DNA of 64,000 nucleotides from assembly GCF_028641065.1 (NCBI RefSeq), contig NC_073400.1:29698001-29762000 (forward strand), written 5' to 3'. The position numbers and the translations under genes are program-made. Each line of letters starts with the position of its first letter. The stretch's first letter is position 1. Under the pieces are notes generated by a model that saw only the letters and a list, made by a program, of their open reading frames with translations, did not search any database and was not told the origin of the DNA. Origin of the DNA: Leucoraja erinacea. Taxonomy: Eukaryota. Positions 1,406 to 63,797 of this stretch are shown in pieces.

Positions 1406-1502
1406 ATGGCGGTGGGACAGGGAGAATTCACCCACCAGAGATGGCCCAGATCCAGGGGAACAGTCGCTCTGTTGGTTCTTGTCGCTGTTGGTCTCACACC
1501 AG
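1406..1502 (+). CDS. Gene A leader (signal peptide) exon MAVGQGEFTHQRWPRSRGTVALLVLVAVGLTP
   Basis: GACATGG Kozak context, hydrophobic core VALLVLVAVGL, phase-1 donor CAG|GTAAAT. Joins in frame to GSSG-IT of the V exon. Conserved in all three units. Confidence 0.85.
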
Positions 1503-4500
1503 GTAAATCGGTGTTTTACAAAATGCTCTGTTCTTTAGAATTATTTACTAGCGCCTTGAATTATTTGTAACCACAGACCTCTCTGTACTGTGTGGGGAGC
1601 TGATGATGAATTGCTCAACACTCGTTAGTTCCTGTAGAGACTTCCATCAGCGGTTGTTGTCGTGTTGTGTGCAGCCAAGTCGGGAGATAACTATCTACAG
1701 CTTGCCTTGCCTTGTGGACCTCATTGAAACTTACTGAATAGTGAAAGGCCTGGATAGAGTGGATGGGGTGAAGATGTTTACACTAGTGGGAGACTCTAGG
1801 ACCAGAGGTCGCAGCCTCAGAATTAAAGGGCGTTGCTTTAGGAAGGAGATGAGGAGGAATTTTGTGAGACAGAAACTGTGAAATTCATTGCCACAGACTG
1901 TGGAGGCCATCAATAGGTATTTCTAAGGCTGAGATGGATAGATTCTTGATCAGTACTGGTGTCAGGAGACCTGGGGAAAAGGTAGGAGGATTTAGTTGAA
2001 TGGGAAAGATAGATCAGCCATGATTGATTGGAGGAGAGTAGACTTGATGGGCCAAATGGCCTAATTCTTCTCCTAGTACTAATGAACATGATCTGTTCTT
2101 CAGAATTATTTGCCAGCATCTTGAATTATTTTGAGCCACAGAGCAGACTACTGGGCTACGAGCTGCTAAAGATAAAATGCTTGCAGACTTGTTCTTCCCT
2201 GCACTAATGACTGTTGTGATGCTGTGTGCAGCCAAATTGTACACAGCTAACTCCCTGTAGAAAATGACCCCACAGCTGGCCTTGTTGATTATGGGTATAG
2301 GGGTAACTCTTGCCCCCAGAACCGAGAGTTTGCTCCACTATTCTGGTGCTAACTATCTCCAGGTGAACTTTCTCAGTGACTTGACAGCAGATCAGCTAAA
2401 TGCTTTACCCCTTGCATATCTCTTGACTTCCTCCCTCTCTGACTGTTGGTCTGAAGAAGTGTCTTGACCCGAAACGTCAGCCATTCCTTCTCTCCAGAGA
2501 TGCCCCCTGATCCGCTGCGTTACTCCAGCATTTAGTGTCTATCAAAGGCACACGGCACTCCCTCCACGCACTGCAATGGGAAATGTTGAACATAAACCTT
2601 AGCACATTCAAAGAAAAAACCTGTGAAAGCCAGCCAATGGGAACAGGCGAGCATCTCAAATGAGGAAGCACCAGAGTGACTGTCCAATTTAGCATCTGGA
2701 GAAGTTGTGGTAATCTCTCCCTTCTGAGAAAAACCAGCTGCCTTACAACAGACTCTGCTGCTCGAGCTGTTCTACACACTTTGCTTTCCCCAGCCTCTGA
2801 GTTCTCCTTCAAGGCATTTGTCTTGTGGCTTGTGAGCTGACCTGGACTGATGTGATGATGTGTCTCCACCTCAGCTCCTGAATCTGCAGAGTTTCACATG
2901 TGTTAGAGTCATAGAGTGATACAGTGTGGAAACAGGCCCTTCGGCCCAACTTGCCCACACCGGCCAACATGTCTCAGCAACACTAGTCCCACCTGTCCAC
3001 GTTTGGTCCAAGTCCCTTCAAACCTGTCCTATCCATGTATCCAGAGGGTCCCACCCTCTCCGGAGACTAAGAAAAGCAGGTCTCCCTACTGTTCACCTAA
3101 GGTCCTTCTACAGGGGCACCATCGAGAGTATACTGACCCACGGCATCACTTCCTGGTTTGGGAGCTGCAAGGCTTATGAACAAAAACAACTTAACAGGAT
3201 AGTGAAGACAGCCAGTAGGATCATTGGTGCTCCACTCCCTTTCCTGTTGGAGATCTATCAGAAGCGTAACATCAGCAGAGCCATCTCCATTATTAAGGAC
3301 CCCTATCATCCATCACATCACATCTTCTCCATTCTGCCACCTGGGAAGAGGTACAGGAGCATCAGCTGCAAAACCAGCAGGATGCCCCACAGCTTCTTCC
3401 CACAGGCAATAAGACTGGTTAACGGACTGTGTCCCCTCCCCATACATCATACACCAACACATCTAACCTCGCCCATACTTTGACAGCTAGGCACCTGTCA
3501 AAGCAAAGCCACTGTTCGGTCTGAATGCCTGTTTTTATTTCAATTTTTAGGCCTATTTTAGATATGTTAATTTTAATTTTAAATCTAGTTTCTTCTGTGT
3601 ATGTAAGTAGATCTACCACAGGTGGAGATAGAGTAGAGGGGTGGAGGGGGAAGAAAGGGGTAGACGGGGAGGGGGGGTGTGAGGGGGAATGGAGAAGGGG
3701 GAGAGGGGGAGGTGGGTCGTTCGCTCACGGCAGCGCTCCTGCCCCTCCAGTTGCCGTGCTTTACGCACACAGCTCGGGCTCCACCCCTCTCTCTCCCCGG
3801 GGAGAGGCGGTGAACAATACACGGAGGGCTGGGCCGGGGGTTGGGGCATCGTATACAAACATCGGCCTCAGCTCACACCCGTCTGCCCAGACCCCGGCAT
3901 CCCTCTCCCTCCCTCCCACACACACACACATAACGCACAGACAACTAACACACACAACTAAGTTAAGATGGGGTAGAAACCTTTTCACCCAGAGTTGTGA
4001 ATCTGTAGAATTCTCTGCCACAGAGGGCAGTGGAGGCCAATTCAAGAGAGAGTTCAAGAGAGAGTTAGATACAGCTCTTAGGGCTAATGGAATCATGGGA
4101 TCACGGGAGCAAGCAGAACTGGACAGTGCCGGCTCGAAGGGCCGAATCATCCCCTCCTGCGCCTATTTTCTATGTTTATATGTTTCTATGAATCGTCATC
4201 TATCCACTTTCTCCAGAGATAGTTCCTGTTTAAGGTTGTGACCTCAATAACGGGTAGGCCATTGAGGACTCAGATGAGGAAATATCTTTTCACCCAGAGA
4301 GTTCCTCTATCTCCAGAGATAGTTCCTGTCCCATTGTGTTACTCCGGCACTTTGTGTCCTTTTGTACATTAACCAGCATCTGCAGTTCCTTGTTTCTACT
4401 AGTTCAATGGGGAAGTGGGTTGTAGTGAGATTGAACACAGGGTGGGTCAGAGTGAGTGACAGGTTGGCTTCCTGTCACATGACCACCACTCATGTCAAGC

Positions 4501-7500
4501 CACGCCCACAGGGAAGGAGGATCTGGGCGCCAGGTAGATTCAGAAGCAGTGTTCAAGAAGGATCTGCAGATGCTGGAAGATAGATATCGCAGTGGAGTAG
4601 ACAAAGTGTTCAAGAAGGAACTCAGTTCTGCTTTCACTGGAACTTGGGGAAAAATCCCGGTGAAATGGGAATTAACACCAGCGGGAAAAGCATTAAAGTG
4701 CAACAGGATCTATGCAAAAGAAGAGACACAAAATGCTGGAGTAACTCAGCGGGACGGGCAGCATCTCTGGAGAGAAGGAAATGGGTGAGGAAACATCACC
4801 TGTCGGTTTCTCCAGAGATGCTGCCTGTCCCGCTGAGTTACTCCAGCTCTTTGTGTCTATCTTTGTGTCAACCAGCACCTGCAGTTCCTTGCTACACATG
4901 ATCTATGCGAAACCATGAACCTGTCTGAACAGCACAAATGACATGTTTTTTATTGTTAAACCTCAGCTTGTGTTGCTGCAGTGTGAGTGATCTTTCATCA
5001 TTAATGTGCCAACAGGGTCAAGCGGAATAACTGAACCCGAGGAGGTGAGGGGAGAGTTGGGGCAGTCGGTCACAGTGGAATGTCAGTATGGTCAGGAATA
5101 CAAGGACAACAGGAAGCTGTGGAGGAAAGGTGATTCTTACCAGAAATCTTATACTGTGGTTTCTACTGATGACCCACAACAACGGAGAACATCGATGACT
5201 GATGACAAAACACACCAGATAGTTTTAGTCACCATCGACAAGCTGGAGAAGAGTGATGAAGGACGCTACTGGTGTGTGATAGTAAAGAGAAACGATTCAC
5301 CCATTGAATTGGTCTCCATCTCATTGAAGGTTTCTGAAGGTAAGTTGACGATCTCTCCTCACTCTCCCAGATGTGAAAATTCCAGCCTGTGAATTCCCGG
5401 CCTCGGTCCTGACGGTGACTCGGTGCCACATCCCCGGGGGTCGCGGTAACGGGGCTGGGTGGATAACTCACTTACTGGGGTCCCGGCCCGTGGGGCCACA
5501 CCAAGAGCTCACTGTCGCTGGAGCAATATGGGGGGGGGGGGGGGGGGGGGGGGGGGCTGTCAGACACCAGCCCCACGGAAGGTCCCATCTACCGGCGGTT
5601 CTGTTGCTGACGGCTCATTTCCACGAAGACGATCGCTCCGGGACCAGAACCTCTGCCGCCCCCTCACTGGGGCAGGTGGTGGGAAACCCGGGTGGAGATA
5701 GGAGTCAATGGGGGAGGGGGCAGGTTAGTAGAAGATACTTAAAATTAGAGAACCAACGTTCAAACCGTTGGGTTGTAAACTACCTGAGCCCAATATGAGG
5801 TGCGGTTCCTCCAATTTGCATGTGGCTTCACTCTGGCAATGGAGGAGGCCCAGGACAGAAAGGTCAGTGTGGGAATGGGAAGGGACATGGACAGGGTTGG
5901 CAACCGGGAGATCAAGAATGGTCTGAACCCGAAAAGGACACCTATCCATTTTCTCCAGAGATTCTGCCTGATCCGCCGAGTTACTCCAGCACTTTGTGTC
6001 TATCTTTGGTTTAAACCAGCACCTGCAGTTCCTCGCTACACATGATCTATGCAAAACCATGAACCTGTCTGAACAGCGCAAATGACATGTTTTTTATTGT
6101 TAAACCTCAGCTTGTGCTGCCGGCGGTTCTGCTGCTGGCGGCTCATTTCCCCAAAGCCGATCGCTCCGGGTCCAGAACCTCTTGCTGCAGTGTGAGTGAT
6201 CTTTCATCATTAATGTGTCCACAGGGTCAAGGGGAATAACTGGACCTAAGGAGGTGAGGGGAGAGTTGGGGCAGTCGGTCACTTTGGAATGTCAGTATGG
6301 TCAGGAATACAGTGACAACAAGAAGCGATGGAGTAAAGGTTATTATTACACAAATTCTTCTACCGTGGTTTCTACTGATGACCCACAATATAGGAGAACA
6401 TCGATGAGTGATAACAAAACACAACGGATAGTTTCAGTCACCATCGACAACCTGAAGAAGAGTGATGAAGGATACTACTGGTGTGTGCTGATTGTAAAGG
6501 GAATATTTCCAATCAATAAAAGGACCTCCATCTTATTGACGGTTTCTGAAGGTACGTTGACGATCTCTCCTCACTCTCCCAGATGTGAACATTCCAGCCT
6601 GGGAATTCCCGGCCTCGGTCCTGACGGTGACTCGGTGCCACATCCCCGTGGGTCGGTGTGAAGGAGGGGGGAGCACATTTACTGGGGTCCCGGCCCATGG
6701 GGCCACACCAAGAGCCCACTGTTCCAGGAGCAGTGTGTGTGTGGGGGGGGGGGGGGGGGGGGGCTCATCAATGGGGACCGGCGGTTCTGCTGCTGGCGGC
6801 TCATTTCCCCAAAGACGATCGCTCCAGGTCCAGAACCTCTGCCGCCCCTCACTGGGGCAGGGGAACAGCCAGAACCTCTGGTGCCCCCTCACCCTCTCCC
6901 CCTGCCCGTCACTGTCACACCCACCACACACACAACATCTGTAGAAAGGTCCCAACACTAAACATTGTCAGTTCATTCCTTCCACAGATGCTGCCTGACC
7001 TGCTGAGTTACTCCAGCACTTTGTGTTTTGCTCAAGATTCCAGCACCTGCAATTCCTTGTGTCTCACAAACTTTGGTGATTCATGAGTTCAGTTTATTGT
7101 TGTTGTCTGTACTGAGGTACAGGGAAAAGCTTTTACCATGTTTCCAATGATGGCCAAATCATTGGGTATTTTTAAGATTCACAGGTTCTCGATTAGTATG
7201 AGTGTCAAGCGATATGGGGAGAAGGGAAGATAATGGGGTTGAGAGGGAGAGATAGATCAGCCATGATTGAATGGCGGAGTAGACATAAATAAGCCAAATG
7301 GCCGCATTCTGCCCCTATCACATGAACTTCATAACAAGACGATTTCAGTACAGTAGTAGAGGGGTTCTTCCGCAGTTGTATCAGGCTCTGGTAAGACCAC
7401 ATCTGGAGTATTGTGTACAGTTTTGGTCTAATTTGAGGAAGAACATCCTTGTGATTGAGGCAGTGCAGCGTAGGTTCACGAGATTGCTCCCTGGGATGGC

Positions 7501-9114
7501 GGGACTGTCATATGAGGAAAGATTGAAAAGACTAGGCTCAAAACTGGAGTTTAGAAGGATGAGTGGGTTTCTTATAGAAACTTATAAAATTATAAAAGGA
7601 CTGGACAAGCTTGATGAAGGAAAAATGTTCCCAATGTTGGGCAAGTCCAGAACCAGGGGCCACAGCCTTAGAATAAAGGGGAGGCCATTTCAGACTGCGG
7701 TGAGAAAAAACTTTTTCACCCAGAGAGTTGTGAATTTGTGGAATTCCGTGCCACAGAAGGCAGTGGAGGCCAAATCACTGGATGGATTTAAGAGAGAGTT
7801 AGATAGAGCTCCAGGGGCTAGTGGAATCAAGGGATATGGGGAGAAGGCAGGCACGGGTTATTGATTGGGGACGTTCAGCCCTGATCACAGTGAATGGCGG
7901 TGCAGGCTCGAAGGGCTGAATGGCCTCGTCTTGCACCTATTTTCTATGTTTCTATAACGTATGAACGAAGAATCCTCATGAGATGACTAGATCAAGGGGC
8001 TTGGTCCATCTATGGGGGCCTCAGAAGGATCCTTGCTCAAATCTCTGGATTGGGATTTGAACCCAGGAATCTCCCAACACGGAGCAAGAGCGCTCCCGAC
8101 TGAGGCATCTCCGACACATCACTAAAGTGGCACAGAACGTGCTTTCAGACTTTTAATGTTCAAAAACGTCATTCACTTTATCTCCACAAGGGTCTCAAAC
8201 AAGCCGCCCAGACATGGTCACCACCACCTCTACAACAATAATCCCAGTGAAATGGGAATTAACACCAGCGGGAAAAGCATTAAAGTGCACCAGGATCTAT
8301 GCAAAAGGAGAGAGACACAAAATGCTGGAGTAACTCAGCAGGAAGGGCAGCATCTCTGGAGAGAAGGAAATGGGTGAGGAAACATCACCCGTCGGTTTCT
8401 CCCGAGATGCTGCCTGTCCCGCTGAGTTACTCCGGCTCTTTGTGTCTATCTTTGGTGTAAACCAGCACCTGCAGTTCCTTGTTACACATGATCTATGCGA
8501 AACCATGAACCTGTCTGAACAGCACAAATGACATGTTTTTTATTGTTAAACCACAGCTTGTGTTGCTGCAGTGTGAGTGATCTTTCATCATTAATGTGCC
8601 CACAGGGTCAAGGGGAATAACTGGACCCGAGGAGGTGAGGGGAGAGGTGGGGCAGTCGGTCACTGTGGAATGTCGGTACGATCGGAAATACAAAGACAAC
8701 GACAAGCTATGGAGTAAAGGTGATTATTACCTGTCATCTCCTACCGTGGTTTCTACTGATCACCCACAACAAGGGAGAACATCGATGACTGATGACAAAA
8801 AACAACGGATAGTTTCAGTCACCATCGACAACCTGGAGAAGAGTGATGAAGGATACTACTGGTGTGTGATAGTAAAGGGAATATTTTCAAGCGATGAAAG
8901 GACCTCCATCTCATTGACGGTTTCTGAAGGTACGTTGACGATCTCTCCTCACTCTCCCAGATGTGAACATTCCAGCCTGGGAATTCCCGGCCTCGGTCCT
9001 GACGGTGACTCGGTGCCACATCCCCGGGGGTCGGGGTGAAGGAGGGGGGAGCACATTTACTGGGGTCCCGGCCCATGGGGCCACACCAAGAGCCCACTGT
9101 CCCAGGAGCAGTGT

Positions 9115-9145
<31 letters not shown>

Positions 9146-12100
9146 GGGGGGGGGGCTCATCAATGGGGACCGGCGGTTCTGCTGCTGGCGGCGCATTTCC
9201 CCAAAGACGATCGCTCCGGGTCCAGAACCCCTGCCGCCCCTCACTGGAGCAGGGGAACAGCCAGAACCTCTGGTGCCCCCTCACCCTCTCCCCCTGCCCA
9301 TCACTGTCACACCCACCACGCACACAACATCTGAAGAAGGGACCCAACCTTAAACATTGTCAGTTCATTCCTTCCACGGATGCTGCCTGACCTGCTGAGT
9401 TACTCCAGCACTTTGTGTTTTGCTCAAGATTCCAGCACCTGCAATTCCTTGTGTCTCACAAACTTTGGTGATTCATGAGCTCAGTTTATTGTTGTGGTCT
9501 GTACTGAGGTACAGGGAAAAGCTTTTACCATGTTTCCAATGAGGGCCAAGTCATTGGGTATTTTCAGGTGGAGATTGACAGGTTCTCCATTAGTACGGGT
9601 GTCAAGCGATATGGGGAGAAGGCAGGAGAATGGGGTTGAGAGGGAGAGATAGATCAGCCATGATTGAAAGGTGGAATAGACTCAATGGGCCAAATGGCCT
9701 CAATCTGCCCCTATCACTTATGAACTAATGAACTAAGAATCCTCAAGAGATGAGTGATATAGACTTTACACTGAGCCACACAAACTGTACAAGATGAGAC
9801 ACTCAACGGGTCGGGCAGCTTCTGTGGAGAGAGAATGAGAGTTAATGTTTCAGGTAAATACCTCCAACCAAATTGCATTATTTCCAATTCAGTCCGCGTG
9901 ATGAAAATAGTCCATGGATCCTCCCGCTCCCAAGTTCTTCTCCATTGTAGAAAAGATGTGCCTAACTCTAGCAGCAGGCAGATAACACAGCCTGTGGGAC
10001 TCTGAAGGGCATGAAAGAAGTCTCTGAATGCTTGTGACCATCTGGTGGCATCTTAATGGGTGAGTCTCCGGTCTAGATCAAGAGGCTTGGTCCATCTATG
10101 GTGGCCTCAGAAGGATCTTTGCTCAAATCTCTGGATTGGGATTTGAACCCAGGAATCTCCCCACACGGAGCAAGAGCGCTCCCGACTGAGGCATCTCCCA
10201 CACATCACTAAAGTGGCACAGAACGTACTTTCAGACATTTAATGTTCAAAAACGTCATTCCCTTTATCTCCACAAGGATCTCAAACAAGCCACCCAGACA
10301 TGGTCAGCACCACCTCTGCAACAATAAGCACAAAGGCTTCCACCACAACCATTCTGACCACCATGCCTCAAGATGCACCAACCACCAAGGCAGCAAGTTC
10401 CACAGAGTCTCCTGGTTCAACACCTACAAACAGGTTAGTAACTCGAAGAGCCAACTCAGCCTCACCTGAGAACCAATTAGTTCAGTTCAATTCAGCTCAG
10501 TTTAAAGATACAGCATGGAAATGGGCCCTTTGGCCCACCGAGTCCGCTCTGAGCAGCGATCACCCCATACACCAGTTCTGTTCTACACACTAGGGGCAAC
10601 TTACTACAAACCCGCACGTCTTTGGAATGTGGGAGGAAACTGGAGAACCCAGAGTAAACTCTTGCGATCACATGGAGAACGTACAGACTCTGCACTGACA
10701 GCACCGGTATCAGGATCGACCCCGCGTCTACTGTGCTGTGAGGCAGCAACTCTACCGCTGAGCTGACATCTCAATGGGCGAGCCTCATGTCTAGATCAAG
10801 GGGCTTGGTCCATCTATGGTGGTTTAGGAAGGATCCTTGCTCAAATCTCAGGTTTCGGATTCGAATCAAAAATCTCCCCACACAGAGCAAGATCGCCCCC
10901 AACTGCAGCATCTCCCACACGTCACTAAAGTGGCACAGAACGTGATTATAAACATTTAATGTTCAAAGACTTCATTCACTTTATCTTCACAAGGGTCTCA
11001 AACATATCACCCAGATATCCTCACCACTTTGGTGTGTGTGTGTGTGTGGGGGGGGGGGGGTTGCACGGTGGCGCAGCGGTAGAGTTGCTGCCTTACAACG
11101 CTTGTAGCGCCAGAGACCCAGGTTCGATCCCGACTACAGGTGCTGCCTGTACGGGGTTTGTACGTTATCCCCACGACCGCATGGGTTTTCTCTGAGATCT
11201 TTGATTTCCTCCAACACTCTAAAGACATACAGGTATGTAAGTAGATTGGCTTGGCGTATGTGTCAATTGACCCTAGTGTGTGTGTAGCCTAGTGTTAGTG
11301 TGCGAGGATCGATGGTCGGTGTGGACTCCATGGGCCGTCGGGCCTGTTTCCGCGCTATATCTCAAAATTAAACTAAACTGGATTAAAATATGGTCACCAC
11401 CACCTCAGGAACCACCACACCCACTCTGCCTCCGGAAGCATCGACCACCAGGAGCTCCTGGTTCATCGCCTCGACACAGGTCAGTGACTCAAAGTCCCAG
11501 TACTTTGAGAAAGCGTGGCTGATCATATTCCAGTCCATTGATAAATACTCCTTGGCCCTGACTAAAGTCCATCTGTCCTTAGTACACCCAGTGGCCCTAC
11601 CATTGTGAATGTCTACCCTTACATGATGCCAAAAACAAATAACGTCACACTTATCATGGTTCAATACCTGCTGGCATTGCTCTGCCCAACATACCAGTTG
11701 CTTCTTATCCCTCTGTGGTCTATGATTATCGTACTATCCAAAATGAGACAATGTTGATGTAATCTGTAAACTCGTAAATCATACTTCCAACATTAACATC
11801 TAAGGCCGGCAGATGGGACTAGTGTAGATAAGGACATCTTGGTCGGCAATGGGGAAATTGGGTCAAAGGACATGTTTTCGTGATCTATGTCTGACCATCA
11901 AAATGAACATCTAAGTTGTTAATGTAGTCATGGAACACCTCCAAGGAATGGGTGCATGTTGCGATATTAACATCTCACCAATGTCCACGCCAAAATCTTG
12001 GATCACACTGAATGATTCCGTGTGCAATATGATGAAAGAAAATTACCAGCGTTGATCTGTGGTAACTCTGTGTGGAAGTAATAATATTTCATTGGATTTC

Positions 12101-13617
12101 CAGGGACATCGTGCTGAATGTTCGCCGTGTTTGGGGTGTGTTACGCTGGGTACTCTTTGGAATTCTGCTTCTCTTCCCGGTTTCCATCAGCTGTGTGACA
12201 ACTTTGAAAAGGTGAAAGTTTGCAATCTCTTTACTCTGATGTTCACATTAAATTCAACTGGAAATGATGGGAATTTACTTTCGATTTGTAGAGATAAAGT
12301 GTGGACATACAGCGCCCTCCATAATGTTTGGGACAAAGACCCTTCATTTATTTATTTGCCTCTGTATTCCACAATTTGAGATTTGTAATTGAAAAAATCA
12401 CACGTGGTTAAAGTGCACATTGTCAGATATTATTAAAGGGTATACAGCCAATCAAGTCCGCGCCGACCAATGATCACCCCGTACACTCGCACTATCCTAC
12501 ACACGAGGGACAATTTACAATTATACAGAGGCCAATTAACCTACAAAACTACACGTCTTTGGATTGTGGTAAGAAACCGGAGCACCTGGATAAAACCCAC
12601 GCTGTCAGAGGCAGAACATACAAACTCCGTACAGACAGCACCCGTAGTCATGATCAAACCCGGGTCTCTGGCGCTGTAAGGCAGCAACTCTACCGCTGCG
12701 CCACTGTGCCGCCCTGGGTCATTTCCTCGGGTAAAATTTGATGGTGGAGATTATAAACTGTGTTTTAATTGTTATTCAAGGAAAAAAACAGCCAAGACCT
12801 TGGAGATGAGGTCGGCAGTGGTGGAGGAAGGAGAGGAACAGCGCCGGTGAGCTGGCTGGGTGAGGCCTCACCTCGCATGGAGACGGCCGTGGGAGGCGAG
12901 GGGAAAAGGGTGCGTTGGTGGGTCGAGGTGTGGGCGGAGTGCGAGTGGGCTGCTGGAGGCCCTGCAGCAGCCGGTGGATCGGGTGCCGCTGGAGGTCCTG
13001 CAGAGGTCGGGGATGAGCGTACGGTTCGGACACGGCCTGCAGCGGCACGGAGCGGTGGTGGAGGCACCGACAACATCGCCAGGCCAGGCCGACCCCTGCA
13101 ACTCCCACCCAGTGCCGTCTCCATGACAATGGGCCTTTAAGCCCAAAATAAAATGGGCCTTTAAGCCCAGTTTGATGTTTAAGAATATAAGATACTGCCA
13201 GTAATGTGGCAACTCTTGTGTACTGCATCATATAATCTGCTATTAATACTCTTGTTCTTAGCTTCAGCTGTGCTTATATCAAGTAAGATTTTTACTGAAT
13301 TCTATACAAAAGAAATGTCACTGTACCCATGTGCATGAGACAATAAAGTATCATTGAACCATTGAACAATGGGGATATAAAAACGGTTAAATGATTACAA
13401 GTATTGAACTGTGGACACGCGTTAGAAGAATAAGATAAAAATGAAGGGTAATCGTTATATCAATATTGTTATTCTGACGGAATGACGCCCAATAATCATC
13501 GTTTAGCTTTTCAGGGCCAGAGAGGGTGTTCACCAGTTGGAGATGTACAAATCTCATCACCTTGACCCTACAGCATCACCACACCACACCTATGTCCAAT
13601 CTACCTTGACCACTTGA
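1406..13617 (+). CDS. Gene A: CD300/pIgR-like (MDIR-like) 3-Ig-V type I receptor, spliced CDS join(1406-1502,5016-5339,6225-6551,8606-8929,10277-10433,12104-12211,13515-13617), 479 aa; or 446 aa if the TM exon reads through to TGA at 12213-12215
   Basis: Exons joined by hand using GT-AG sites with compatible phases (1,1,1,1,2,2). No internal stops. Signal peptide + V domains + mucin stalk + TM architecture. Confidence 0.8.
3040..3610 (+). mobile_element. Rex-Babar-like LINE 3' fragment (unit A copy)
   Basis: LRRLRKAGLPTVHLRSFYRGTIESILTHGITSWFGSC...HSFFPQAIRLVN is typical of the Rex1/Babar RT C-terminus. Confidence 0.75.
4409..4507 (+). promoter_or_regulatory. Candidate intronic myeloid enhancer (copies at 24150-24248 and 60582-60680)
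   Basis: GGGGAAGTG (PU.1-type), CTTCCTG (ETS) abutting GTCACATGAC (MiT/TFE/USF E-box), and GCCACGCCC (KLF/SP) within 100 bp of non-repeat sequence. Confidence 0.45.
4724..4858. repeat. Inverted repeat (about 50-bp arms) of a Penelope-associated repeat upstream of A1; also upstream of A3, B1 and C1
   Basis: AGACACAAAATGCTGGAGTAACTCAGCGGGACGGGCAGCATCTCTGGAGA pairs with TCTCCAGAGATGCTGCCTGTCCCGCTGAGTTACTCCAGC...TGTGTCT. Confidence 0.75.
5016..5339 (+). CDS. Gene A Ig V exon A1
   Basis: Acceptor AACAG|GG and donor GAAG|GTAAGT, 324 nt. Motifs GQSVTVEC-Y, KLW, VTIDKLEKSDEGRYWC of a CD300/pIgR-type V-set domain. Confidence 0.93.
5725..6040 (-). mobile_element. Penelope-like element remnant (copies at about 25462, 61895 and 63039)
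   Basis: Minus-strand translation HCQSEATCKLEEPHLILGSGSLQPNGLNV resembles the C-terminus of the Penelope GIY-YIG endonuclease. Confidence 0.65.
6225..6551 (+). CDS. Gene A Ig V exon A2
   Basis: CACAG|GG ... GAAG|GTACGT, 327 nt, open frame, DEGYYWC motif. Confidence 0.92.
7330..7955 (+). mobile_element. 5'-truncated CR1 LINE
   Basis: LYQALVRPHLEYCVQFWS...NFFTQRVVNLWNS peptide and (TTTCTATG)n tail. Confidence 0.88.
8191..8241 (+). pseudogene. Truncated copy of the mucin-stalk exon fused to an intron-1-like sequence (duplication breakpoint)
   Basis: Same acceptor and 5' sequence as 10277 (GSQTSRPDMVTTTSTT). Then switches at AATAA|TCCCAGTGAAATGGG to sequence matching about 4655 onward. Confidence 0.8.
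8606..8929 (+). CDS. Gene A Ig V exon A3
   Basis: CACAG|GG ... GAAG|GTACGT, 324 nt, open frame, V-set motifs. Confidence 0.92.
10277..10433 (+). CDS. Gene A Ser/Thr-rich mucin-like stalk exon (GSQTSHPDMVSTTSATISTKASTTTILTTMPQDAPTTKAASSTESPGSTPTN)
   Basis: Acceptor CTCCACAAG|GA (phase 1) and donor ACAG|GTTAGT (phase 2). S/T/P-rich translation. Confidence 0.85.
10490..10762 (-). mobile_element. tRNA-derived SINE (copy at about 27655-27935)
   Basis: Reverse complement of the same SINE family. Confidence 0.75.
10994..11479 (+). pseudogene. Second stalk exon copy, disrupted by a SINE (gene A)
   Basis: Homologous acceptor and 5' end, then (GT)n/G-run + SINE, then resumes MVTTTSGTTTPTLPPEAST. Donor CAG|GTCAGT is out of frame relative to the first copy. 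Confidence 0.7.
11063..11388 (+). mobile_element. tRNA-derived SINE inside the second stalk exon (copy at about 28236-28558)
   Basis: GCACGGTGGCGCAGCGGTAGAG...GGTTCGATCCC and TAAAC tail. Confidence 0.85.
12104..12215 (+). CDS. Gene A transmembrane exon RDIVLNVRRVWGVLRWVLFGILLLFPVSISCVTTLKR(*)
   Basis: Acceptor TTTCCAG|G, phase 2, matching the stalk donor. Hydrophobic helix containing Arg. Ends either at donor AG|GTGAAA (12211) or at in-frame TGA (12213-12215). Confidence 0.85.
12310..12440 (+). mobile_element. Tc1/mariner TIR remnant (copy at 29488-29618)
   Basis: TA|CAG(C/T)GCCCTCCATAATGTTTGGGACAAAGAC, a Tc1-type terminus after TA. Confidence 0.6.
12445..12712 (-). mobile_element. tRNA-derived SINE (copy at about 29623-29890)
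   Basis: Ends CTACCGCTGCGCCACTGTGCCGCC, the reverse complement of the SINE head. Confidence 0.78.
13515..13617 (+). CDS. Gene A putative terminal cytoplasmic exon (R)AREGVHQLEMYKSHHLDPTASPHHTYVQSTLTT*
   Basis: Acceptor TTTAGCTTTTCAG|G, phase 2, compatible with the TM donor. Non-repeat sequence conserved in unit B. AATAAA downstream at 14011. Confidence 0.5.
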
Positions 13618-18000: not shown

Positions 18001-18074
18001 AGTTCCACAGATTCATCACCCTCTGACTAAAGGTTTATTGAGCAATTCTTTGAGCAAACTGCCCACCTGCACTA

Positions 18075-20076: not shown

Positions 20077-20173
20077 ATGGCGGTGGGACAGGGAGAATTC
20101 ACCCACCAGAGACGGCCCAGATCCAGGGGAACAGTCGCTCTGTTGGTTCTTGTCGCTGTTGGTCTCACACCAG
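20077..20173 (+). CDS. Gene B leader exon MAVGQGEFTHQRRPRSRGTVALLVLVAVGLTP
   Basis: Near-identical to 1406-1502. Donor CAG|GTAAAT. Confidence 0.85.
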
Positions 20174-47900: not shown

Positions 47901-50900
47901 GGTTGGGGGCTGGGGTGTGTGTGGGTGGGGTGGTGTTTGGTGATTGGGATTGTGAAGTGTGGGGGTGTGTTGGGGGTGTTTGCAGGAGAGCAGTTGTTGG
48001 GTGGTGGGTTTGGGTTGTGGGGGGGGGGGCTGGTTGTGAGGATGTGGGGGTGTGCTGGGGTTGGGTGTGGGTGATTGGTTGGGGGGGTGGGGGGGGGGGT
48101 GTGCGTGTGTCGTTGTTGTTGAGATTTGAGGGTTTGTGGGTGGTTTTGTGGTGTTGGTGTTTTGGTGTGGGGGGTGGAGCTTGGTTGGGTGGTGGGGGGG
48201 GGGGGGTGGGATTGGGGGGGGTGGGGGTATGGGGGGGGTGGTGTGGGGTGGGGGTGGGTGGGGGTGTGGGTAGTTGTGTGGGTTGTTTTGTGTGGTTTTG
48301 GTGGGCTGTTGGTTGGTTGTGTGGTGATGGGGGGGGGGGAGGTCTTGTGGGTTTGGTGACATAATGGGGGGTTGTGGGGTTGTATGTTGGGGGGGGGGGG
48401 ATTTGGTGGGGGGTGTGTGTGTGTCGTTGTTGGGGGGGTGGGTGTGTTGGGTGGGTTGGGTGAGGGGTTATGGGGGGGTGTGGGTGTGTAGGGTGGTGTT
48501 GGTTTGCTTGTGTTTGGGGGGGAAGCTTTTTTTGTTTGTTGGGGTGGGGTCGATTTGTGGGTTTTGTGGGGGTGGGGGGGGTGCTGTGGTTTTGGGGGTG
48601 GGTGTGTTGCTTGGGCTGTGGGTTGTGGGTGGGTTTTTGGTGTGTTTGCTTGTGGGGTGATGTGTTTTGTGGGGGGCTGGATTTGGTGGTGTGTGGTGTG
48701 TGGGCTTGTGGGTGGTGTTGGGTTGGGTTTTCTGGGGGGGTGTGTGTGGGGTGTGTGGTGGGGGGGGGTTTGGTTGTGGATTTTGGGGTGCTGTGGGTGT
48801 GATGGGGGGGTCGGGATTTGTGGCGTGGGGGTGTGGGGGGGGGGGATTTTGGTGTGGGGTGTGTTGGGGTGTTGTGTCTCTGGGGTTTGGGTGTGGGGGG
48901 TGTGGGTGGTGTCTGAGGGTGTGGGTGGTGTTGGGGTTGTTGTGTGGTGGGTGGGGGGGGGGGTGGGCTTGTTGTTGGGATGTGGGTGTGGGTGTGGGTT
49001 GGGTTGTGGCTTGTGGGTTGTGTGTGTTTGGTGTTCGGGAGGGTGTGGGGGGGGGTTGTGGGGGGGGGGGGGTGTGTTTTGGGTTGGGGGGGTGGGGGTG
49101 TTGGGGGGGGGGGGAGTGTGGGGTTGGGGGGTTTGGGGGGGGGGGGGGGTGTGTTGGGTTGTTTGTGGTTTTTGTTATTTGGGTGGTTGGTGGGTTGTGT
49201 GGTGGGGTGGATTTCGGGGGTGGTATGGGGTTTGGGGTTGGATTTGTGGTTGGGTTGACACGGTGGGGGGTTTGTGGGGGGGGGTTGGGGGTGGGGGTGG
49301 GTTTGTGGGGGTGGTGCTTGTGGGTTGGCGTGGGGTGTGTGCTGGGCGGGTGGGTTGACGGTGTGTTTCCTGGGGGGTGTGGGGGGTTTTTGTGTTGTTG
49401 GGGGGGATTTTTTGCTGGGTTTGGGGTGATGTGTGGGTGTGTTGGGGGGTTGGTGATGGGGGGTGGGTGATGGGGGGTGGGGGGGTGGATTTTGTGGTGT
49501 TGGGGGGGGTTGGTGTTTGTGGTTGGGGGGGGTTGTGTGGTGGGGTGTGGGGGGGTTGGGGGGGGATGTTTGGGGGGGTGTGGGGTGGTGTGTGGGGGGG
49601 CTTGTTGCTGGGATGGTGGGGGGGTGGGGTTGGGGGGTGTTGGGCTTTGTGGCTTTGGGGGGGGGGTGTGGTTTGTTGGGATGGGGGGATTTGGGGGGAT
49701 TGGTGTGGGGGGGGGGGTTGGGGGGGGGGTGGGGGTGATTGCTTGGTGTGGTGGGGGGGGTTTGGGGGGGGGGATGTGGTGTGTGGTTGTGGATGTTGGG
49801 TTGGTGTTGTGGGGGGTTGGGGTGGGGGGGGGGGGGTTGTGTTGGTTGGGTGGGGGGGGGGGGTTTGGTTGGGTTGGTGTGCTTTGAGGTGGGATGATTT
49901 TGTGTGTCGGGCTGGTGGGGTGGTGGTGGGTTGGCTGGGGGGGGGGGGTTCGTAGTGGGGGGTTGGATTGGGGGGGGTTTGGGTAGTTGGGGGGGTTGTG
50001 TTGGGGTGTGGTGTTGGGGGGGTTGCGATTGGGGTGGGGGGGTGGGGGGGTGTGGGGGGGGGTGGTGGGGGGTGTGTGGGGGGGGGTGTGTGTGGGGGTG
50101 GGGGGGGGGGTGGTGGATTGGTGGTGGGGGGGGGGGGGGTGGCCAGTGGGTGGTGGGGGTGTGGGTGTGGTGTGGTGCCTTGGTGTTGGGCGTGGCTGTG
50201 GTGTTGTGGGCGGGATTGGGAGGGGGTGTGGTTCGTTGTGTGTGGTGTGTGGNNNNNNNNNNNNNNNNNNNNNNNNNNNNNNNNNNNNNNNNNNNNNNNN
50301 NNNNNNNNNNNNNNNNNNNNNNNNNNNNNNNNNNNNNNNNNNNNNNNNNNNNNNNNNNNNNNNNNNNNNNNNNNNNNNNNNNNNNNNNNNNNNNNNNNNN
50401 NNNNNNNNNNNNNNNNNNNNNNNNNNNNNNNNNNNNNNNNNNNNNNNNNNNNNNNNNNNNNNNNNNNNNNNNNNNNNNNNNNNNNNNNNNNNNNNNNNNN
50501 NNNNNNNNNNNNNNNNNNNNNNNNNNNNNNNNNNNNNNNNNNNNNNNNNNNNNNNNNNNNNNNNNNNNNNNNNNNNNNNNNNNNNNNNNNNNNNNNNNNN
50601 NNNNNNNNNNNNNNNNNNNNNNNNNNNNNNNNNNNNNNNNNNNNNNNNNNNNNNNNNNNNNNNNNNNNNNNNNNNNNNNNNNNNNNNNNNNNNNNNNNNN
50701 NNNNNNNNNNNNNNNNNGTTGTGGTGTTTTGTGTGTGTTGTGTGTGTGTGGTGTGGTGTGGGTGTTGGTTTGTGGTGTGTGTGTGTGTGTGGTGGTGTGT
50801 GTGGTGTTTGTGTGTTTTGTGTGGTCTGTTGGGGTGTTGTGTGTGTGTGTGGTTGTGGGTGTGTGGTGTGGTGGTGGTGTGTGTGTGTGTTGTGTGTGTG

Positions 50901-52853
50901 TTTGTGGTGGTGTGTGTTTGGTGTGGGTGTGTGTGTGGTTTGGGTTTGGGTTGTGTGTGTGTTGTGTGGTGTGTGGGGTTGTGATGTGTGTGTGTGGTGT
51001 GTTGTGTGTGCTGTGTTGTGTGTTGGGTGTGTTGTGTGTGTGTGGTGTGTGTGTGTTGTGTTTGGTGTTTGTGTGTGTGGTGTGTGGTGTGTGGTGTGTG
51101 TTGTGGTGTGTGGGTGTGTGTTTGGTGGTGTGATGGTGGGGCTGTGTATGTGTTGTGTGTGTGTTTGTGGGGTGTGTGTGNNNNNNNNNNNNNNNNNNNN
51201 NNNNNNNNNNNNNNNNNNNNNNNNNNNNNNNNNNNNNNNNNNNNNNNNNNNNNNNNNNNNNNNNNNNNNNNNNNNNNNNNNNNNNNNNNNNNNNNNNNNN
51301 NNNNNNNNNNNNNNNNNNNNNNNNNNNNNNNNNNNNNNNNNNNNNNNNNNNNNNNNNNNNNNNNNNNNNNNNNNNNNNNNNNNNNNNNNNNNNNNNNNNN
51401 NNNNNNNNNNNNNNNNNNNNNNNNNNNNNTGTGTGTGGTGTTTTTGTGTGCTTGTGTGTGGTGGGTGTGTGTGTTGTTGGGTGGGTGTGTTGTGTGTGTG
51501 TGTGTGTGCTTGTGTGTTTGTTGTGTGCGTGTGTTGTGTGGTNNNNNNNNNNNNNNNNNNNNNNNNNNNNNNNNNNNNNNNNNNNNNNNNNNNNNNNNNN
51601 NNNNNNNNNNNNNNNNNNNNNNNNNNNNNNNNNNNNNNNNNNNNNNNNNNNNNNNNNNNNNNNNNNNNNNNNNNNNNNNNNNNNNNNNNNNNNNNNNNNN
51701 NNNNNNNNNNNNNNNNNGTGGGTGTTGTGTGTTGTTGTGTGTGTTGTGGGTGTGTTGTTGGGCTGGGGTGTTGCTGTGTGTGTTGGTTGTGTTTTGTGTG
51801 TGTGTGTGTTGTTTGTGGTTGGGTTGTGGTGTGGGTGGTGTGGTGTTTTGTTGTGTTTGTGTGTGTTGTTTTGTGTTGTGGTGTGTGTGTTGTGTTGTGT
51901 TGTGTGGTGTTTTGTTTGGGTTGTGGTGGTGGTGTGGTGTTTGTGGTGGGTGTTGTTGGGGGTTGGTGTGGCTTGGTGTGTTGTGGTGTGTTGTTTTGGT
52001 TTTTTGCTTGTAGTGGTGTGTGGGTTGGGTTTGTGTTGTTGTGTTGCTTGTGTGTGGTGTGTGTGTGGTGTGGTGTGTGTGTTGGTGCTGTTTGGGGGGT
52101 GTTTTTTCTGTTGGTGTTTGTGTTTGTGTGTGGGTGTGTTGTGGTGTTTGCTGTGGTGTGTGTGTGTGTTGGGTGTTTTTGTGTGTTGGGGCTGGGGTTG
52201 CTGGTGTGTGGTGTGTGGGTTTGGGTGTGTGTGGGGGTTGTGGTTGGGGTGTGGTGTTTGTTTCACTTGGGTGTGTGGTGTGGGTGTTGGGTTTGGGGGT
52301 GTGGGGTGGTCTATGTGGGTGTGTGTTGTGTGGTCTTTGGTTGTGGGTGGTGTTGTGGTTTTGGTGTGGGGGGGTTGGTTGTGGGTGTGTGGTGTTGGTG
52401 TTGTGTGGGTGTGGGTGTCTGGGTTGTGTGTGTGGGTGTGTTGGGGGTGGCGTGGTGTGTGGGTGTGTGTGTGGGGTGTGGTGGGTGGGTGCTGGTGTTG
52501 TTGTGTGTGGTGAGTGACTTGGTGTGTAAATTGGTATTGGTGTGTGTGGTGTGGGTTTGTGTGGTTCGTGGTGTGTGTGTGGGTGGTGTGGGGTGGTGGG
52601 CGTTTGGTTTGTTTTGTGCTNNNNNNNNNNNNNNNNNNNNNNNNNNNNNNNNNNNNNNNNNNNNNNNNNNNNNNNNNNNNNNNNNNNNNNNNNNNNNNNN
52701 NNNNNNNNNNNNNNNNNNNNNNNNNNNNNNNNNNNNNNNNNNNNNNNNNNNNNNNNNNNNNNNNNNNNNNNNNNNNNNNNNNNNNNNNNNNNNNNNNNNN
52801 NNNNNNNNNNNNNNNNNNNNNNNNNTGGTGAGGTGTGTGGTGTGTGGTGGCGT
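35939..52853. other. Assembly gap or low-quality fill: N runs interleaved with aperiodic G/T-only sequence
   Basis: Almost no A or C on the + strand, no stable period, dozens of N blocks. It splits a single SINE. Confidence 0.85.
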
Positions 52854-55786: not shown

Positions 55787-55883
55787 ATGGCGGTGGGACA
55801 GGGAGAATTCACCCTCCAGAGACGGCCCAGATCCAGGGGAACAGTCGCTCTGTTGGTTCTTGTCGCTGTTGGTCTCACACCAG
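55787..55883 (+). CDS. Gene C leader exon MAVGQGEFTLQRRPRSRGTVALLVLVAVGLTP (gene C runs off the window end)
   Basis: Paralogue of the A and B leaders with the same donor. Confidence 0.85.
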
Positions 55884-61191: not shown

Positions 61192-61515
61192 GGTCAAGGG
61201 GAATAACTGAACCCGAGGAGGTGAGGGGAGAGTTGGGGCAGTCGGTCACTGTGGAATGTCAGTATGGTCGGAAATACAAAGACAACGACAAGCTATGGAG
61301 TAAAGGTGATTATTTCTTTCCATCTTCTACCGTGGTTTCTACTGATGACCCACAACGAGGGAGAACATCGATGACTGATTTCAAAGAACAACGGATAGTT
61401 TCAGTCACCATCGACAAGCTGGAGAAGAGTGATGAAGGACTCTACTGGTGTGTGATTGTAAAGGGAAACGATTCACCCATTGTATCGGCCTCCATCTCAT
61501 TGACGGTTTCTGAAG
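61192..61515 (+). CDS. Gene C Ig V exon C1
   Basis: CACAG|GG ... GAAG|GTAAGT, 324 nt, open frame. Confidence 0.93.
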
Positions 61516-62329: not shown

Positions 62330-62653
62330 GGTCAAGGGGAATAACTGGACCCGAGGAGGTGAGGGGACAGTTGGGGCAGTCGGTCACTGTGGAATGTCAG
62401 TATGGTCAGGAATACACTGACAACAAGAAGCTGTGGAGTAAAGGTGATTCTTACCGGAATTCTTATACTGTGTTTTCTACTGATGACCAACGACGAGGGA
62501 GAACATCGATGACTGATGACAAAGAACAACAGATAGTTTTAGTCACCATCGACAAGCTGAAGAAGAGTGATGAAGGACTCTACTGGTGTGTGATAGTAAA
62601 GGGAAACGATTCACTCATTGAATCGACCTCCATCTCATTGACGGTTTCTGAAG
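62330..62653 (+). CDS. Gene C Ig V exon C2
   Basis: CACAG|GG ... GAAG|GTAAGT, 324 nt, open frame. Confidence 0.92.
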
Positions 62654-63473
62654 GTAAGTTGACGATCTCTCCTCACTCTCCCAGATGTGAAAATTCCAGC
62701 CTGTGAATTCCCGGCCTCGGTCCTGATGGTGACTCGGTGCCACATCCCCGGGGGGGGGGGTCGCGGTAAGGGGGTTGGGTGGATAACTCACTTACTGGGG
62801 TCCCGGCCCGTGGGGCCACACCAAGAGCTCACTGTCGCTGGAGCAGTATGGGGGGGGGGGGGGGGGGGGACTGTCAGACACCAGCCCCACGGAAGGTCCC
62901 ATCTACCGGCGGTTCTGTTGCTGACGGCTCATTTCCACGAAGACGATCGCTCCGGGACCAGAACCTCTGCCGCCCCCTCACTGGGGCAGGTGGTGGGAAA
63001 CCCGGGTGGAGATAGGAGTCAATGGGGGAGGGGGCAGGTTAGTAGAAGATACTTAAAATTAGAGAACCAACGTTCAAACCGTTGGGTTGGAAACTACCTG
63101 AGCCCAATATGAGGTGCGGTTCCTCCAATTTGCATGTGGCCTCACTCTGGCAATGGAGGATGCCCAGGACAGAAAGGTCAGTGTGGGAATGGGAAGGGAC
63201 ATGGACAGGGTTGGCAACCGGGAGATCAAGAATGGTCCCGACCCGAAAAAGACACCTATCCATTTTCTCCAGAGATTCTGCCTGATCCGCCGGGTTACTC
63301 CAGCACTTTGTGTCTATCTTTGGTGTAAACCAGCACCTGCAGTTCCTTGCTACACATGATCTATGCGAAACCATGAACCTGTCTGAACAGCGCAAATGAC
63401 ATGTTTTTTATTGTTAAACCTCAGCTTGTGTTGCTGCAGTGTGAGTGATCGTTCATCATTAATGTGTCCACAG

Positions 63474-63797
63474 GGTCAAGGGGAATAACTGGACCCAAGG
63501 AGGTGAGGGGAGAGTTGGGGCAGTCGGTCACTGTGGAATGTCGGTATGGTCAGGAATACACTGACAACAAGAAGCTATGGAGTAAAGGTTATTATTACAC
63601 ACTATCTGATACCGTGGTTTCTACTGATGACTCACAACAAGGGAGAACATCGATGACTGATAACGAAACAAAACGGATAGTTTCAGTCACCATCGGCAAC
63701 CTGAAGAAGAGTGATGAAGGATACTACTGGTGTGTGATTGGAAAGGGAATATTTTCAAGCAATGAAAAGACCTCCATCTCATTGACGGTTTCTGAAG
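63474..63797 (+). CDS. Gene C Ig V exon C3
   Basis: CACAG|GG ... GAAG|GTACGT, 324 nt, open frame. Confidence 0.92.

What the first reader, a model, noticed from the sequence alone, without database searches (positions are those of the whole stretch)
1406..63797. Tandem array of modular CD300/pIgR-like receptors with variable V-domain number
Seen: three paralogous genes share a near-identical leader, and A and B share the stalk and an identical TM segment. They carry 3 (A), 2 (B) and at least 3 (C) open V exons. Established: CD300/pIgR/TREM-like multigene receptors, including the skate MDIRs, have this V + mucin + TM layout. Inference: this is a recently expanding, lineage-specific innate receptor family that diversifies in the germline by gaining, losing and recombining V cassettes. 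It may be undescribed.
Basis: partly seen in the sequence, partly recalled or inferred. Interest (0 to 1): 0.8.

Follow-up and report, generated by a model that had tools for sequence, protein, structure and literature searches.

The report
Skate paired CD300/pIgR-like receptor gene cluster
This stretch of little-skate DNA holds three tandem copies of an innate immune receptor gene whose antibody-like (V) exons vary in number and evolve unusually fast; it is a well-marked example of a known kind of receptor family, not a new system.

Summary
Three roughly 17-kb tandem units, about 95% alike, each carry a near-identical leader exon and 3 (A), 2 (B) or 3 (C) open V-set exons. Every V exon is a phase 1-1 cassette in a 1.14-kb repeat. 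A and B continue into a mucin stalk, a membrane anchor with a conserved arginine, and a short tail without tyrosine. All N runs lie between B and C and touch no exon.

The genome is little skate. Gene A is RefSeq XP_055510911.1, exon for exon. Gene C is XP_055510917.1, and its tail, beyond the window, carries ITIMs. RefSeq has no separate gene B. Its isoform X1 joins B's leader and first V exon to C.

- V exons are 3-6 times more diverged than their introns.
- Mean dN/dS is 1.97.
- The exons are mosaic (PHI p=0.0014).
- A relic stalk exon between A's V2 and V3 marks how A gained a V.

Relatives with 1-5 V domains are annotated across skates and rays. "Undescribed" is not supported. Identity with the published MDIRs could not be tested. 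RNA runs gave no coverage, so the number of V exons per transcript is unknown. The scan noted similar clusters 127-247 kb upstream in this genome.

The parts
1406..1502 (+). Gene A exon 1: start codon and leader, ends in phase 1
   Evidence: exact match to residues 1-32 of XP_055510911.1
5016..5339 (+). Gene A V1 exon (alpha type, donor gtaagt), 324 nt, phase 1-1
6225..6551 (+). Gene A V2 exon (beta type, donor gtacgt), 327 nt
7328..7955 (.). Retroelement fragment inserted in the intron after A V2
   Evidence: 78% match to 58877-59512 and 35668-35035
7987..8241 (+). Relic of a stalk exon (acceptor plus first 51 nt) with its upstream intron. It is joined at about 8237-8241 to the last 369 nt of a leader intron, and is the scar of the event that added V3.
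   Evidence: its 17 residues are identical to the start of gene C's stalk
8606..8929 (+). Gene A V3 exon, a mosaic: alpha-like to about nt 189, beta-like from about nt 250
10277..10433 (+). Gene A Ser/Thr/Pro-rich stalk exon, phase 1 to 2
10966..11028 (+). Second, older stalk-exon relic, cut short by (TG)n and a tRNA-like SINE; its twin in B is at 28140-28202
12104..12211 (+). Gene A TM exon with the conserved Arg (GVLRWVLFG...)
12781..12850 (+). Gene A last coding exon: tail KKTAKTLEMRSAVVEEGEEQRR, no tyrosine, stop at 12848-12850
20077..20173 (+). Gene B leader exon (used by RefSeq as exon 1 of isoform X1 of gene C)
24760..25083 (+). Gene B V1 exon (alpha type)
25898..26218 (+). Gene B V2 exon (321 nt, RWNFS-type FG loop); found in no RefSeq protein retrieved
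27466..27607 (+). Gene B stalk exon (142 nt)
29279..29389 (+). Gene B TM exon (111 nt, same Arg-bearing span as A)
29959..30028 (+). Gene B last coding exon, stop at 30026-30028
35939..52825 (.). Intergenic tract of almost only G and T on the + strand, broken by 26 N runs; not part of any gene model except as an intron of RefSeq isoform X1
55787..55883 (+). Gene C leader exon
61192..61515 (+). Gene C V1 exon (alpha type)
62330..62653 (+). Gene C V2 exon (alpha type, with a CDR1-like patch shared with beta exons)
63474..63797 (+). Gene C V3 exon (beta type). The stalk, TM and ITIM-tail exons lie beyond the window.

Best explanation
The window is part of the little skate's cluster of CD300/pIgR-like innate immune receptor genes, of the kind published for skates as MDIR. 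A segmental duplication of about 17 kb produced three tandem genes with almost the same promoter region, leader and V cassettes.

Genes A (3 V) and B (2 V) end in a membrane span with a conserved arginine and a 24-residue tail without tyrosine. I infer that they signal through an ITAM adaptor of the FcR-gamma/DAP12 kind. Gene C (3 V) ends, outside the window, in a tail with two ITIMs and a YMNL motif. I infer that it recruits SH2 phosphatases and inhibits. Together they form a paired activating/inhibitory set that looks at the same or similar ligands.

Each V exon is a symmetric phase 1-1 cassette inside a 1.14-kb repeat. Unequal crossing-over and gene fusion can therefore add or remove domains without breaking the frame. 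Gene A gained its third V by a join between a stalk exon and a leader intron. The V exons, above all their loop regions, are kept diverse by selection and by exchange of segments among cassettes, while the introns stay nearly identical.

Shown here: the gene structures, the RefSeq identities, the duplication, the fusion scar, the mosaicism, and the excess of exon and nonsynonymous change. Inferred: adaptor pairing, inhibitory signalling, the ligand-driven cause of the selection, and that all V exons enter one transcript.
For: - Self-alignment shows three units 92-98% alike.
- All exons are open with GT-AG sites and consistent phases: A has 1407 nt of CDS, B 1065 nt.
- Gene A's seven exons each match XP_055510911.1 exactly, and C's four match XP_055510917.1.
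- C's tail carries VIYTTV, YMNL and VVYATI.
- The Arg-bearing span (LRW/TRW ... VS(I/T)(S/K)C) is conserved in Amblyraja, Narcine and Hemitrygon. The ITIM tail is conserved from sawshark to skates.
- All eight V exons pass the Pfam V-set cut-off. The best solved relatives are pIgR (E 1e-31) and CLM-1/CD300 (E 7e-15).
- V exons differ at 7-11% of sites against 1.5-3.7% in about 800 nt of flanking intron (Fisher p 2e-4 to 1e-9 in 7 of 8 pairs).
- dN/dS is 1.0-7.9 in all 28 pairs. The mean is 1.97, with a bootstrap 95% range of 1.20-3.53.
- The variable codons cluster at residues 23-36, 39-45, 52-56, 61-67 and 88-99.
- PHI gives p=0.0014 and A3 shows a single alpha-to-beta switch.
- A stalk relic is joined to leader-intron sequence.
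Against: - There is no RNA support. In three RNA runs (5-25% of each read), B's V exons had depth about 0 and no exon-exon joint was listed. The few reads on the stalk exon carry the letters of another paralog. Tissues are unknown.
- RefSeq does not model B as a gene of its own.
- Synonymous divergence (mean 0.075) also exceeds intron divergence. Part of the exon excess is therefore imported or retained old variation, not new point mutation.
- The arginine lies near the outer edge of the predicted span, so adaptor pairing is not certain.
- The B-C join runs through a poorly assembled tract.
Confidence: 0.75

Rival explanations
1. The multi-V proteins are annotation constructs. Each transcript would use only one (or fewer than all) of the interchangeable V cassettes, so every gene would give a small repertoire of single-V receptors by alternative splicing.
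For: All V exons share phase 1-1 and near-identical splice sites. Thorny skate has single-V models with the same leader, stalk and TM.
Against: No transcript data of either kind were obtained here. Multi-V models are predicted in seven batoid species. All cassettes in the window stay open and under selection, which either reading would allow.
Confidence: 0.25
2. Part of the array is an assembly artefact. A and B (or B and C) would be diverged haplotypes or misplaced copies, and the true locus would hold fewer genes.
For: Immune loci are prone to false duplication. The B-C interval holds 26 N runs in a G/T-only tract of doubtful quality. RefSeq merges B with C.
Against: The A-to-B junction is unbroken sequence without N. 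The units differ by 4-5%, by a whole V cassette, by retroelement insertions and, for C, by tail type. The flanks of the tract are the two halves of one repeat copy.
Confidence: 0.1
3. These are the cartilaginous-fish counterparts of the polymeric immunoglobulin receptor and transport polymeric IgM across epithelia.
For: RefSeq names them pIgR-like. The best solved match is pIgR, all five domains summed. They carry several tandem V domains of the same type.
Against: The tails are either ITIM-bearing or 24 residues long with a charged membrane span. They are not the long sorting tail of pIgR (own knowledge). Both cysteines of the C-C' disulfide are gone. They form a multigene paired family under diversifying selection, unlike a single conserved transporter.
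Confidence: 0.05

Closest known systems
MDIR (modular domain immune-type receptors) of the clearnose skate, Cannon et al. 2006, Immunogenetics 58:362 (cited in PMC3031540; the paper itself is not held)
   Same: A skate multigene family of activating/inhibitory Ig receptors with structural similarity to CD300, TREM, FCAR and pIgR (PMC3031540). From my own memory of the abstract: one to six Ig domains, one form with a positively charged TM residue, and others with ITIMs.
   Different: Sequence identity to MDIR1-5 could not be tested. No Raja eglanteria protein surfaced in three word searches covering 89-644 aa. From memory, MDIR domains were called I- or C2-set in four subfamilies. Here all domains belong to one V-set subtype.
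Mammalian CD300 / CMRF35-like molecules
   Same: The V domain type matches (CLM-1 E 7e-15). Both have a mucin-like stalk, and both are paired ITIM and charged-TM members in a tandem cluster.
   Different: CD300 proteins have one V domain; these have 2-3. The CX7C disulfide is replaced by SX7S. The charged residue here is an Arg near the outer end of the span.
Polymeric immunoglobulin receptor
   Same: Tandem V domains of the same subtype; the best single-domain match is to D5.
   Different: The tail and signalling logic differ. This is a multigene family that evolves fast, and the C-C' disulfide is absent.
Primate KIR/LILR and other paired receptor families (own knowledge)
   Same: Tandem young duplicates. 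Domain number changes by unequal crossing-over. Activating forms have an Arg/Lys in the TM and a short tail, beside ITIM forms. The ligand-binding exons show positive selection and segment exchange.
   Different: The domain type is unrelated (C2/I-set), as is the lineage. Here the cassettes are V-set and all of one phase class.
RefSeq models XP_055510911.1, XP_055510917.1 and XP_055510916.1 (Leucoraja erinacea) and batoid 'CMRF35-like molecule' / 'pIgR-like' models
   Same: Gene A and gene C match their models exon for exon. Thorny skate relatives are 71-80% identical with the same leader, stalk and both TM types.
   Different: Gene B has no model of its own. Isoform X1 joins B's leader and V1 to C's V1-V3 across the N-riddled tract.

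Membership tests
CD300/pIgR-type V domain clan | V-set Ig domain whose closest solved relatives are pIgR, CD300, TREM and NKp44 | tested here: met
   Pfam V-set E 1e-10 to 1e-15. The PDB ranking runs pIgR, CLM-1/CD300f, CD300a, TREM-1/2, NKp44.
CD300/pIgR-type V domain clan | Second disulfide between the C and C' strands (W-C-x7-C) | tested here: not met
   All eight V exons have W-(S/R/K)-x7-S at that place. Stingray relatives (Hemitrygon, Mobula) keep CX7C. Narcine and Pristiophorus keep only the first Cys. This is a secondary loss within a homologous family.
CD300 (CMRF35-like) family | Single V domain, stalk, TM; paired ITIM and charged-TM members | tested here: inconclusive
   The stalk, the TM and both signalling types are present. 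The genes carry 2-3 V exons, not one. Orthology or synteny with the mammalian CD300 locus was not tested.
pIgR | Single-copy gene with a long cytoplasmic sorting tail, no ITIM and no charged TM | tested here: not met
   The tails are 24 aa without Tyr, or ITIM-bearing. There are at least three tandem paralogs.
pIgR | Binds J-chain-containing polymeric Ig | not testable with these tools
   Needs binding assays.
MDIR | Skate multigene family with a modular, variable number of Ig ectodomains | tested here: met
   There are 3, 2 and 3 V exons in three tandem paralogs, and 1-5 in batoid relatives.
MDIR | Forms with a positively charged TM residue beside ITIM forms | tested here: met
   A and B have an Arg in GVLRWVLFG. 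C has VIYTTV and VVYATI.
MDIR | Sequence relationship to published MDIR1-5 (e.g. ABC86796, ABC86797, ABC86799) | not testable with these tools
   These sequences could not be fetched and none appeared. The paper (PMC3701310) is not held.
Paired activating/inhibitory receptors | Near-identical ectodomain modules on opposite signalling tails, encoded side by side | tested here: met
   Leaders are 98-99% alike and V exons 84-93% alike, with the same cassette types in A, B and C. The tails are of the two types. The signalling itself was not tested.

The most novel reading that the evidence does not exclude
The cassettes may be used combinatorially. Because all V exons of A, B and C share phase and splice sites, read-through and alternative splicing could place different V combinations on either an activating or an inhibitory tail. 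This would include joins across gene borders, such as the one RefSeq isoform X1 draws from B's leader and V1 to C's V1-V3. Together with exon-limited segment exchange and selection (exons 3-6 times more diverged than introns), three germline genes would then yield a sizeable receptor repertoire.
Probability: 0.1. Interest if true: 0.7.

Novelty: new member of a known kind. Interest (0 to 1): 0.4.

Why it matters
The locus shows, in one cartilaginous fish, each step by which paired innate receptors diversify.
- A young segmental duplication.
- Symmetric V cassettes that can be gained or lost in frame.
- A preserved scar of a gene fusion that added a domain.
- V exons that change several times faster than their own introns.

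It also flags a probable RefSeq mis-merge of two genes. For comparative immunology it is a clean test bed for how activating and inhibitory partners keep or swap their binding modules. It does not reveal a new kind of system.

Tried and rejected
- RNA test. One stretch, gene B from V1 to its last exon, was laid with three RNA runs and one contig run. The V exons had no coverage, and the deep signal came only from intronic repeats and poly-G reads. The stalk, TM and tail exons each had about one read, and the reads on the stalk exon carried another paralog's letters. This leaves expression and junctions untested; it is not evidence of silence.
- AlphaFold on the eight-V alignment gave a poor model (pLDDT 59). 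I did no fold search and used only its rough strand order.
- The MDIR paper is not held. Literature searches found only one paper that mentions MDIRs.
- The large all-against-all protein search was not used. The word searches had already found named relatives, and that search carries no names.
- I looked for inhibitory-type TM or tail exons in units A and B and found none.
- I looked for further V exons or V pseudo-exons and found none.
- I rejected relaxed constraint or pseudogene decay as the cause of exon divergence. It cannot push exon divergence above intron divergence or dN above dS.
Full report
**What is there.** Self-alignment of the window shows three tandem units: A at 48-17704, B at 18051-34423, and C from 53783 to the window's end. 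They are 92-98% identical.

Each unit starts a gene with a 97-nt leader exon (1406, 20077, 55787). It encodes MAVGQGEFT(H/L)QR(W/R)PRSRGTVALLVLVAVGLTP and ends in phase 1 at cag|gtaaat. The three leaders differ at 1-2 bases.

Eight V exons follow: three in A, two in B, three in C.
- They are 321-327 nt long, so all are multiples of three and phase 1-1.
- Their acceptors are almost identical (catcattaatgtg(c/t)c(c/a)acag).
- They have one of two donors. A1, B1, C1 and C2 end in gtaagt ("alpha"). A2, A3, B2 and C3 end in gtacgt ("beta").
- All pass the Pfam V-set threshold.

A and B continue with a Ser/Thr/Pro-rich stalk exon, a TM exon and a last exon that encodes KKTAKTLEM(R/G)SAVVEEGEEQRR followed by a stop. 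Every exon is open and has GT-AG borders. The coding length is 1407 nt for A and 1065 nt for B.

**The gaps.** The 26 N runs lie between 35939 and 52825. That is 5.9 kb after B's stop codon and 3 kb before C's start codon, so no exon or frame depends on them. The letters between the N runs are almost only G and T on the + strand, degenerate (TG)n and G-rich, without a clean repeat unit.

The sequence just left of the tract matches 29705-29787 of an interspersed-repeat copy elsewhere in the window. The sequence just right of it matches 29773-29849 of the same copy. The two flanks therefore look like the two halves of one repeat element with a 15-nt overlap. This favours B and C being true neighbours. 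The length of the tract, and whether anything is hidden in it, remains open. I did not try to fill any N.

**Whose genes.** Word searches found thorny-skate "CMRF35-like molecule 3" proteins 71-80% identical. Using the 2-V thorny-skate protein as query, they then found little-skate RefSeq proteins.

I checked exon by exon, without building a joined model.
- All seven exons of A are exact substrings of XP_055510911.1, "polymeric immunoglobulin receptor-like", 468 aa.
- C's leader and three V exons are exact substrings of XP_055510917.1 (isoform X2, 514 aa).

The window is therefore Leucoraja erinacea. XP_055510917.1 continues into a different membrane span and a tail with VIYTTV, YMNL and VVYATI, that is, two ITIM-type motifs. 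Those exons lie beyond the window, and no copy of them exists inside it.

Isoform X1 (XP_055510916.1, 622 aa) starts with B's leader and B's V1 and then runs into C's V1-V3. B's V2, stalk, TM and tail exons are in none of the retrieved proteins. RefSeq therefore treats B as an upstream first-exon pair of gene C. Yet the sequence shows a complete, open, six-exon gene B of the same type as A. I regard X1 as probably a mis-merge, but I could not test it.

**What kind of receptor.** By sequence, the V domains are closest to pIgR (E 1e-31 over five domains, best to D5) and to CLM-1/CD300f, CD300a, TREM and NKp44. All eight lack both cysteines of the C-C' disulfide typical of this clan, with W-(S/R/K)-x7-S in place of W-C-x7-C. 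The stingray members of the same family keep CX7C. Narcine and a sawshark keep the first Cys only. The motif was thus lost secondarily.

Across batoids the family has two conserved back ends.
- One is a span with an invariant arginine: GVLRWVLFG in skates, AVLRWLLFK in Narcine, ALTRWILFG in Hemitrygon. It is followed by VS(I/T)(S/K)C and a short tail.
- The other is an ordinary span followed by KxRQ(R/K)KKTG and an ITIM / YMNL / ITIM tail.

Conservation of the Arg span over the whole of Batoidea argues that it has a partner. An arginine in the outer third of the span is the pattern of FcR-gamma-coupled receptors. That comparison comes from my own knowledge and is an inference. A and B therefore look like the activating partners and C like the inhibitory partner of one paired set.

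**How the array changes.** The interval between A's V2 and V3 is built from four pieces.
- The normal last-V-to-stalk intron (6552-7328).
- A retroelement fragment (7328-7955).
- The 3' end of that intron with the acceptor and first 51 nt of a stalk exon (7987-8241; 95% identical to 10073-10327).
- Directly after it, the last 369 nt of a leader intron (8237-8605; 96% identical to 24391-24759), followed by V3.

This is the scar of a non-homologous join between a stalk exon and a leader intron. It arose either as a tandem duplication inside one gene or as a fusion of a two-V gene with a downstream one-V gene. Thorny skate has such a one-V Arg-TM gene, and its V groups with A3. The relic's 17 residues equal the start of gene C's stalk. 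An older stalk relic, cut by (TG)n and a SINE, lies downstream of the working stalk exon in both A and B.

Exon A3 is a clean mosaic. Five alpha-diagnostic sites up to nt 189 are followed by eight beta-diagnostic sites from nt 250. A CDR1-like patch is shared by C2 (alpha) with C3 and B2 (beta). Of the pairs of informative sites, 43% are incompatible, and the PHI test gives p=0.0014.

**Fast exons, quiet introns.** Among cassettes the 200 nt before each exon are 94-99% identical. The 600 nt after each exon are 97-99.5% identical within a type. The exons themselves are only 84-93% identical. In seven of eight comparable pairs, exon divergence is 3-6 times intron divergence (Fisher p 2e-4 to 1e-9).

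Nei-Gojobori dN/dS is at or above 1 in all 28 pairs, up to 7.9. The mean dN is 0.147 and the mean dS 0.075, a ratio of 1.97. The codon bootstrap gives a 95% range of 1.20-3.53, with 3 of 1000 replicates at or below 1. The variable codons fall in five patches: 23-36, 39-45, 52-56, 61-67 and 88-99. On the rough strand order of the model these are loop regions, including the CDR1- and CDR3-like loops.

In contrast, the leader (1-2%), TM (3.7%) and tail (1.4%) exons are as quiet as the introns. The stalk exon is not: A and B differ there at about 10% of bases. Because dS in the exons is itself above intron divergence, the pattern is not pure point-mutation selection. Old or imported variation is being retained and shuffled in the exons while the surrounding DNA is homogenised. 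Either way, selection favours diversity of the binding domains.

**Age and spread.** In a tree of 47 V domains, all skate domains form one clade (100/98). Stingray and manta domains form another, and Narcine a third. Multi-V arrays therefore arose or were homogenised separately in each order.

Within skates the alpha type, the B2 type, the A2 type and the A3 type each pair with a thorny-skate domain. The V types thus predate the Leucoraja/Amblyraja split, while the arrangement of cassettes per gene differs. For example, the B-like V1+V2 pair sits on an inhibitory-type span in thorny skate. "Recently expanding" is right for the gene copies and cassette counts, but not for the V types.

**RNA.** No indexed RNA run held the stretch. 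I laid gene B's V1-to-tail region (24700-30100) with three raw RNA runs of the same species label and one contig run, at 97% likeness.
- B's V exons had depth 0-0.2.
- The stalk, TM and tail exons had about one read each.
- The reads on the stalk exon carry G at 27481, which gives SRPD as in C's stalk and the relic, not B's SHPD. They come from a paralog.
- No exon-exon joint was listed.
- Only 5-25% of each run was read, and the tissues are unknown.

Expression, the number of V exons per transcript and the X1 join all remain untested. This is the main weakness of every functional reading here.

**Comparison and verdict.** The locus works like the paired receptor families KIR/LILR, CD300, and the skate MDIRs described in 2006. 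The MDIRs are cited in PMC3031540, but the original paper is not held. I could not fetch MDIR sequences, and none surfaced in the three word searches. Membership in MDIR proper is therefore likely but untested.

The genes are not pIgR orthologues in any functional sense. Two of the three genes are already RefSeq models, and the family is annotated across batoids.

- the activating/inhibitory pairing of A/B with C;
- an intact gene B that RefSeq merges into C;
- the fusion scar that explains A's third V;
- the quantified excess of exon and nonsynonymous change, with mosaicism;
- the stepwise loss of the CX7C disulfide.

Earlier notes of this scan describe similar clusters 127-247 kb upstream in the same genome.

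Noticed in passing
window 35939-52825: A 16.9-kb tract consists almost only of G and T on the + strand: degenerate (TG)n, then G-rich from about 45100 to 50250. It is broken by 26 N runs. Its two flanks are adjoining halves, with a 15-nt overlap, of one interspersed-repeat copy. It could be a real strand-asymmetric low-complexity expansion or poor long-read consensus.
   Followed up: partly
window 20077-25083 joined to 61192-63797: RefSeq isoform X1 (XP_055510916.1) uses gene B's leader and V1 and then gene C's V1-V3 and tail. It skips B's V2, stalk, TM and tail exons, the N-riddled tract and C's own leader. This is probably a mis-merge of two genes.
   Followed up: partly
window 57671-59068: An open 465-aa ORF with a reverse-transcriptase domain (Pfam RVT_1, E 2e-33) lies inside gene C's leader intron. 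The matching introns of A and B lack it. A 98% identical inverted fragment of the same element lies at 35033-35687, next to the G/T tract.
   Followed up: partly
window 10966-11150 and 28140-28324: A second, older relic of the stalk exon (acceptor plus about 33 nt) lies in both A and B. It is cut short by (TG)n and a tRNA-like SINE, which points to an earlier rearrangement with a breakpoint in the same exon.
   Followed up: partly
window 27466-27607 (RNA runs X12, X16): The few RNA reads on B's stalk exon read G at 27481, and some also G at 27496 or at 27564. They stem from a paralog with an SRPD-type stalk such as gene C. A family member is therefore expressed at low level in those samples.
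   Followed up: no
window 25276-25293 and 26324-26343: Thousands of RNA reads, especially in run X16, end in long poly-G at G-runs in the introns after B's V1 and V2. This is most likely a sequencing-chemistry artefact, not transcription.
   Followed up: no
proteins P0002, P0005, P0011 (thorny skate, stingray, electric ray): The C-C' disulfide (CX7C) is kept in stingrays and mantas, half kept in Narcine, a sawshark and one thorny-skate gene, and fully lost in all little-skate V exons here. The loss was stepwise within one receptor family.
   Followed up: partly
protein P0003 (Amblyraja radiata, 368 aa): The thorny-skate protein with a B-like V1+V2 pair has the inhibitory-type membrane span, but its tail ends early without ITIMs (...SFKAFAFRSHQEQCMVI). 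It may be a truncated or mis-predicted tail.
   Followed up: no
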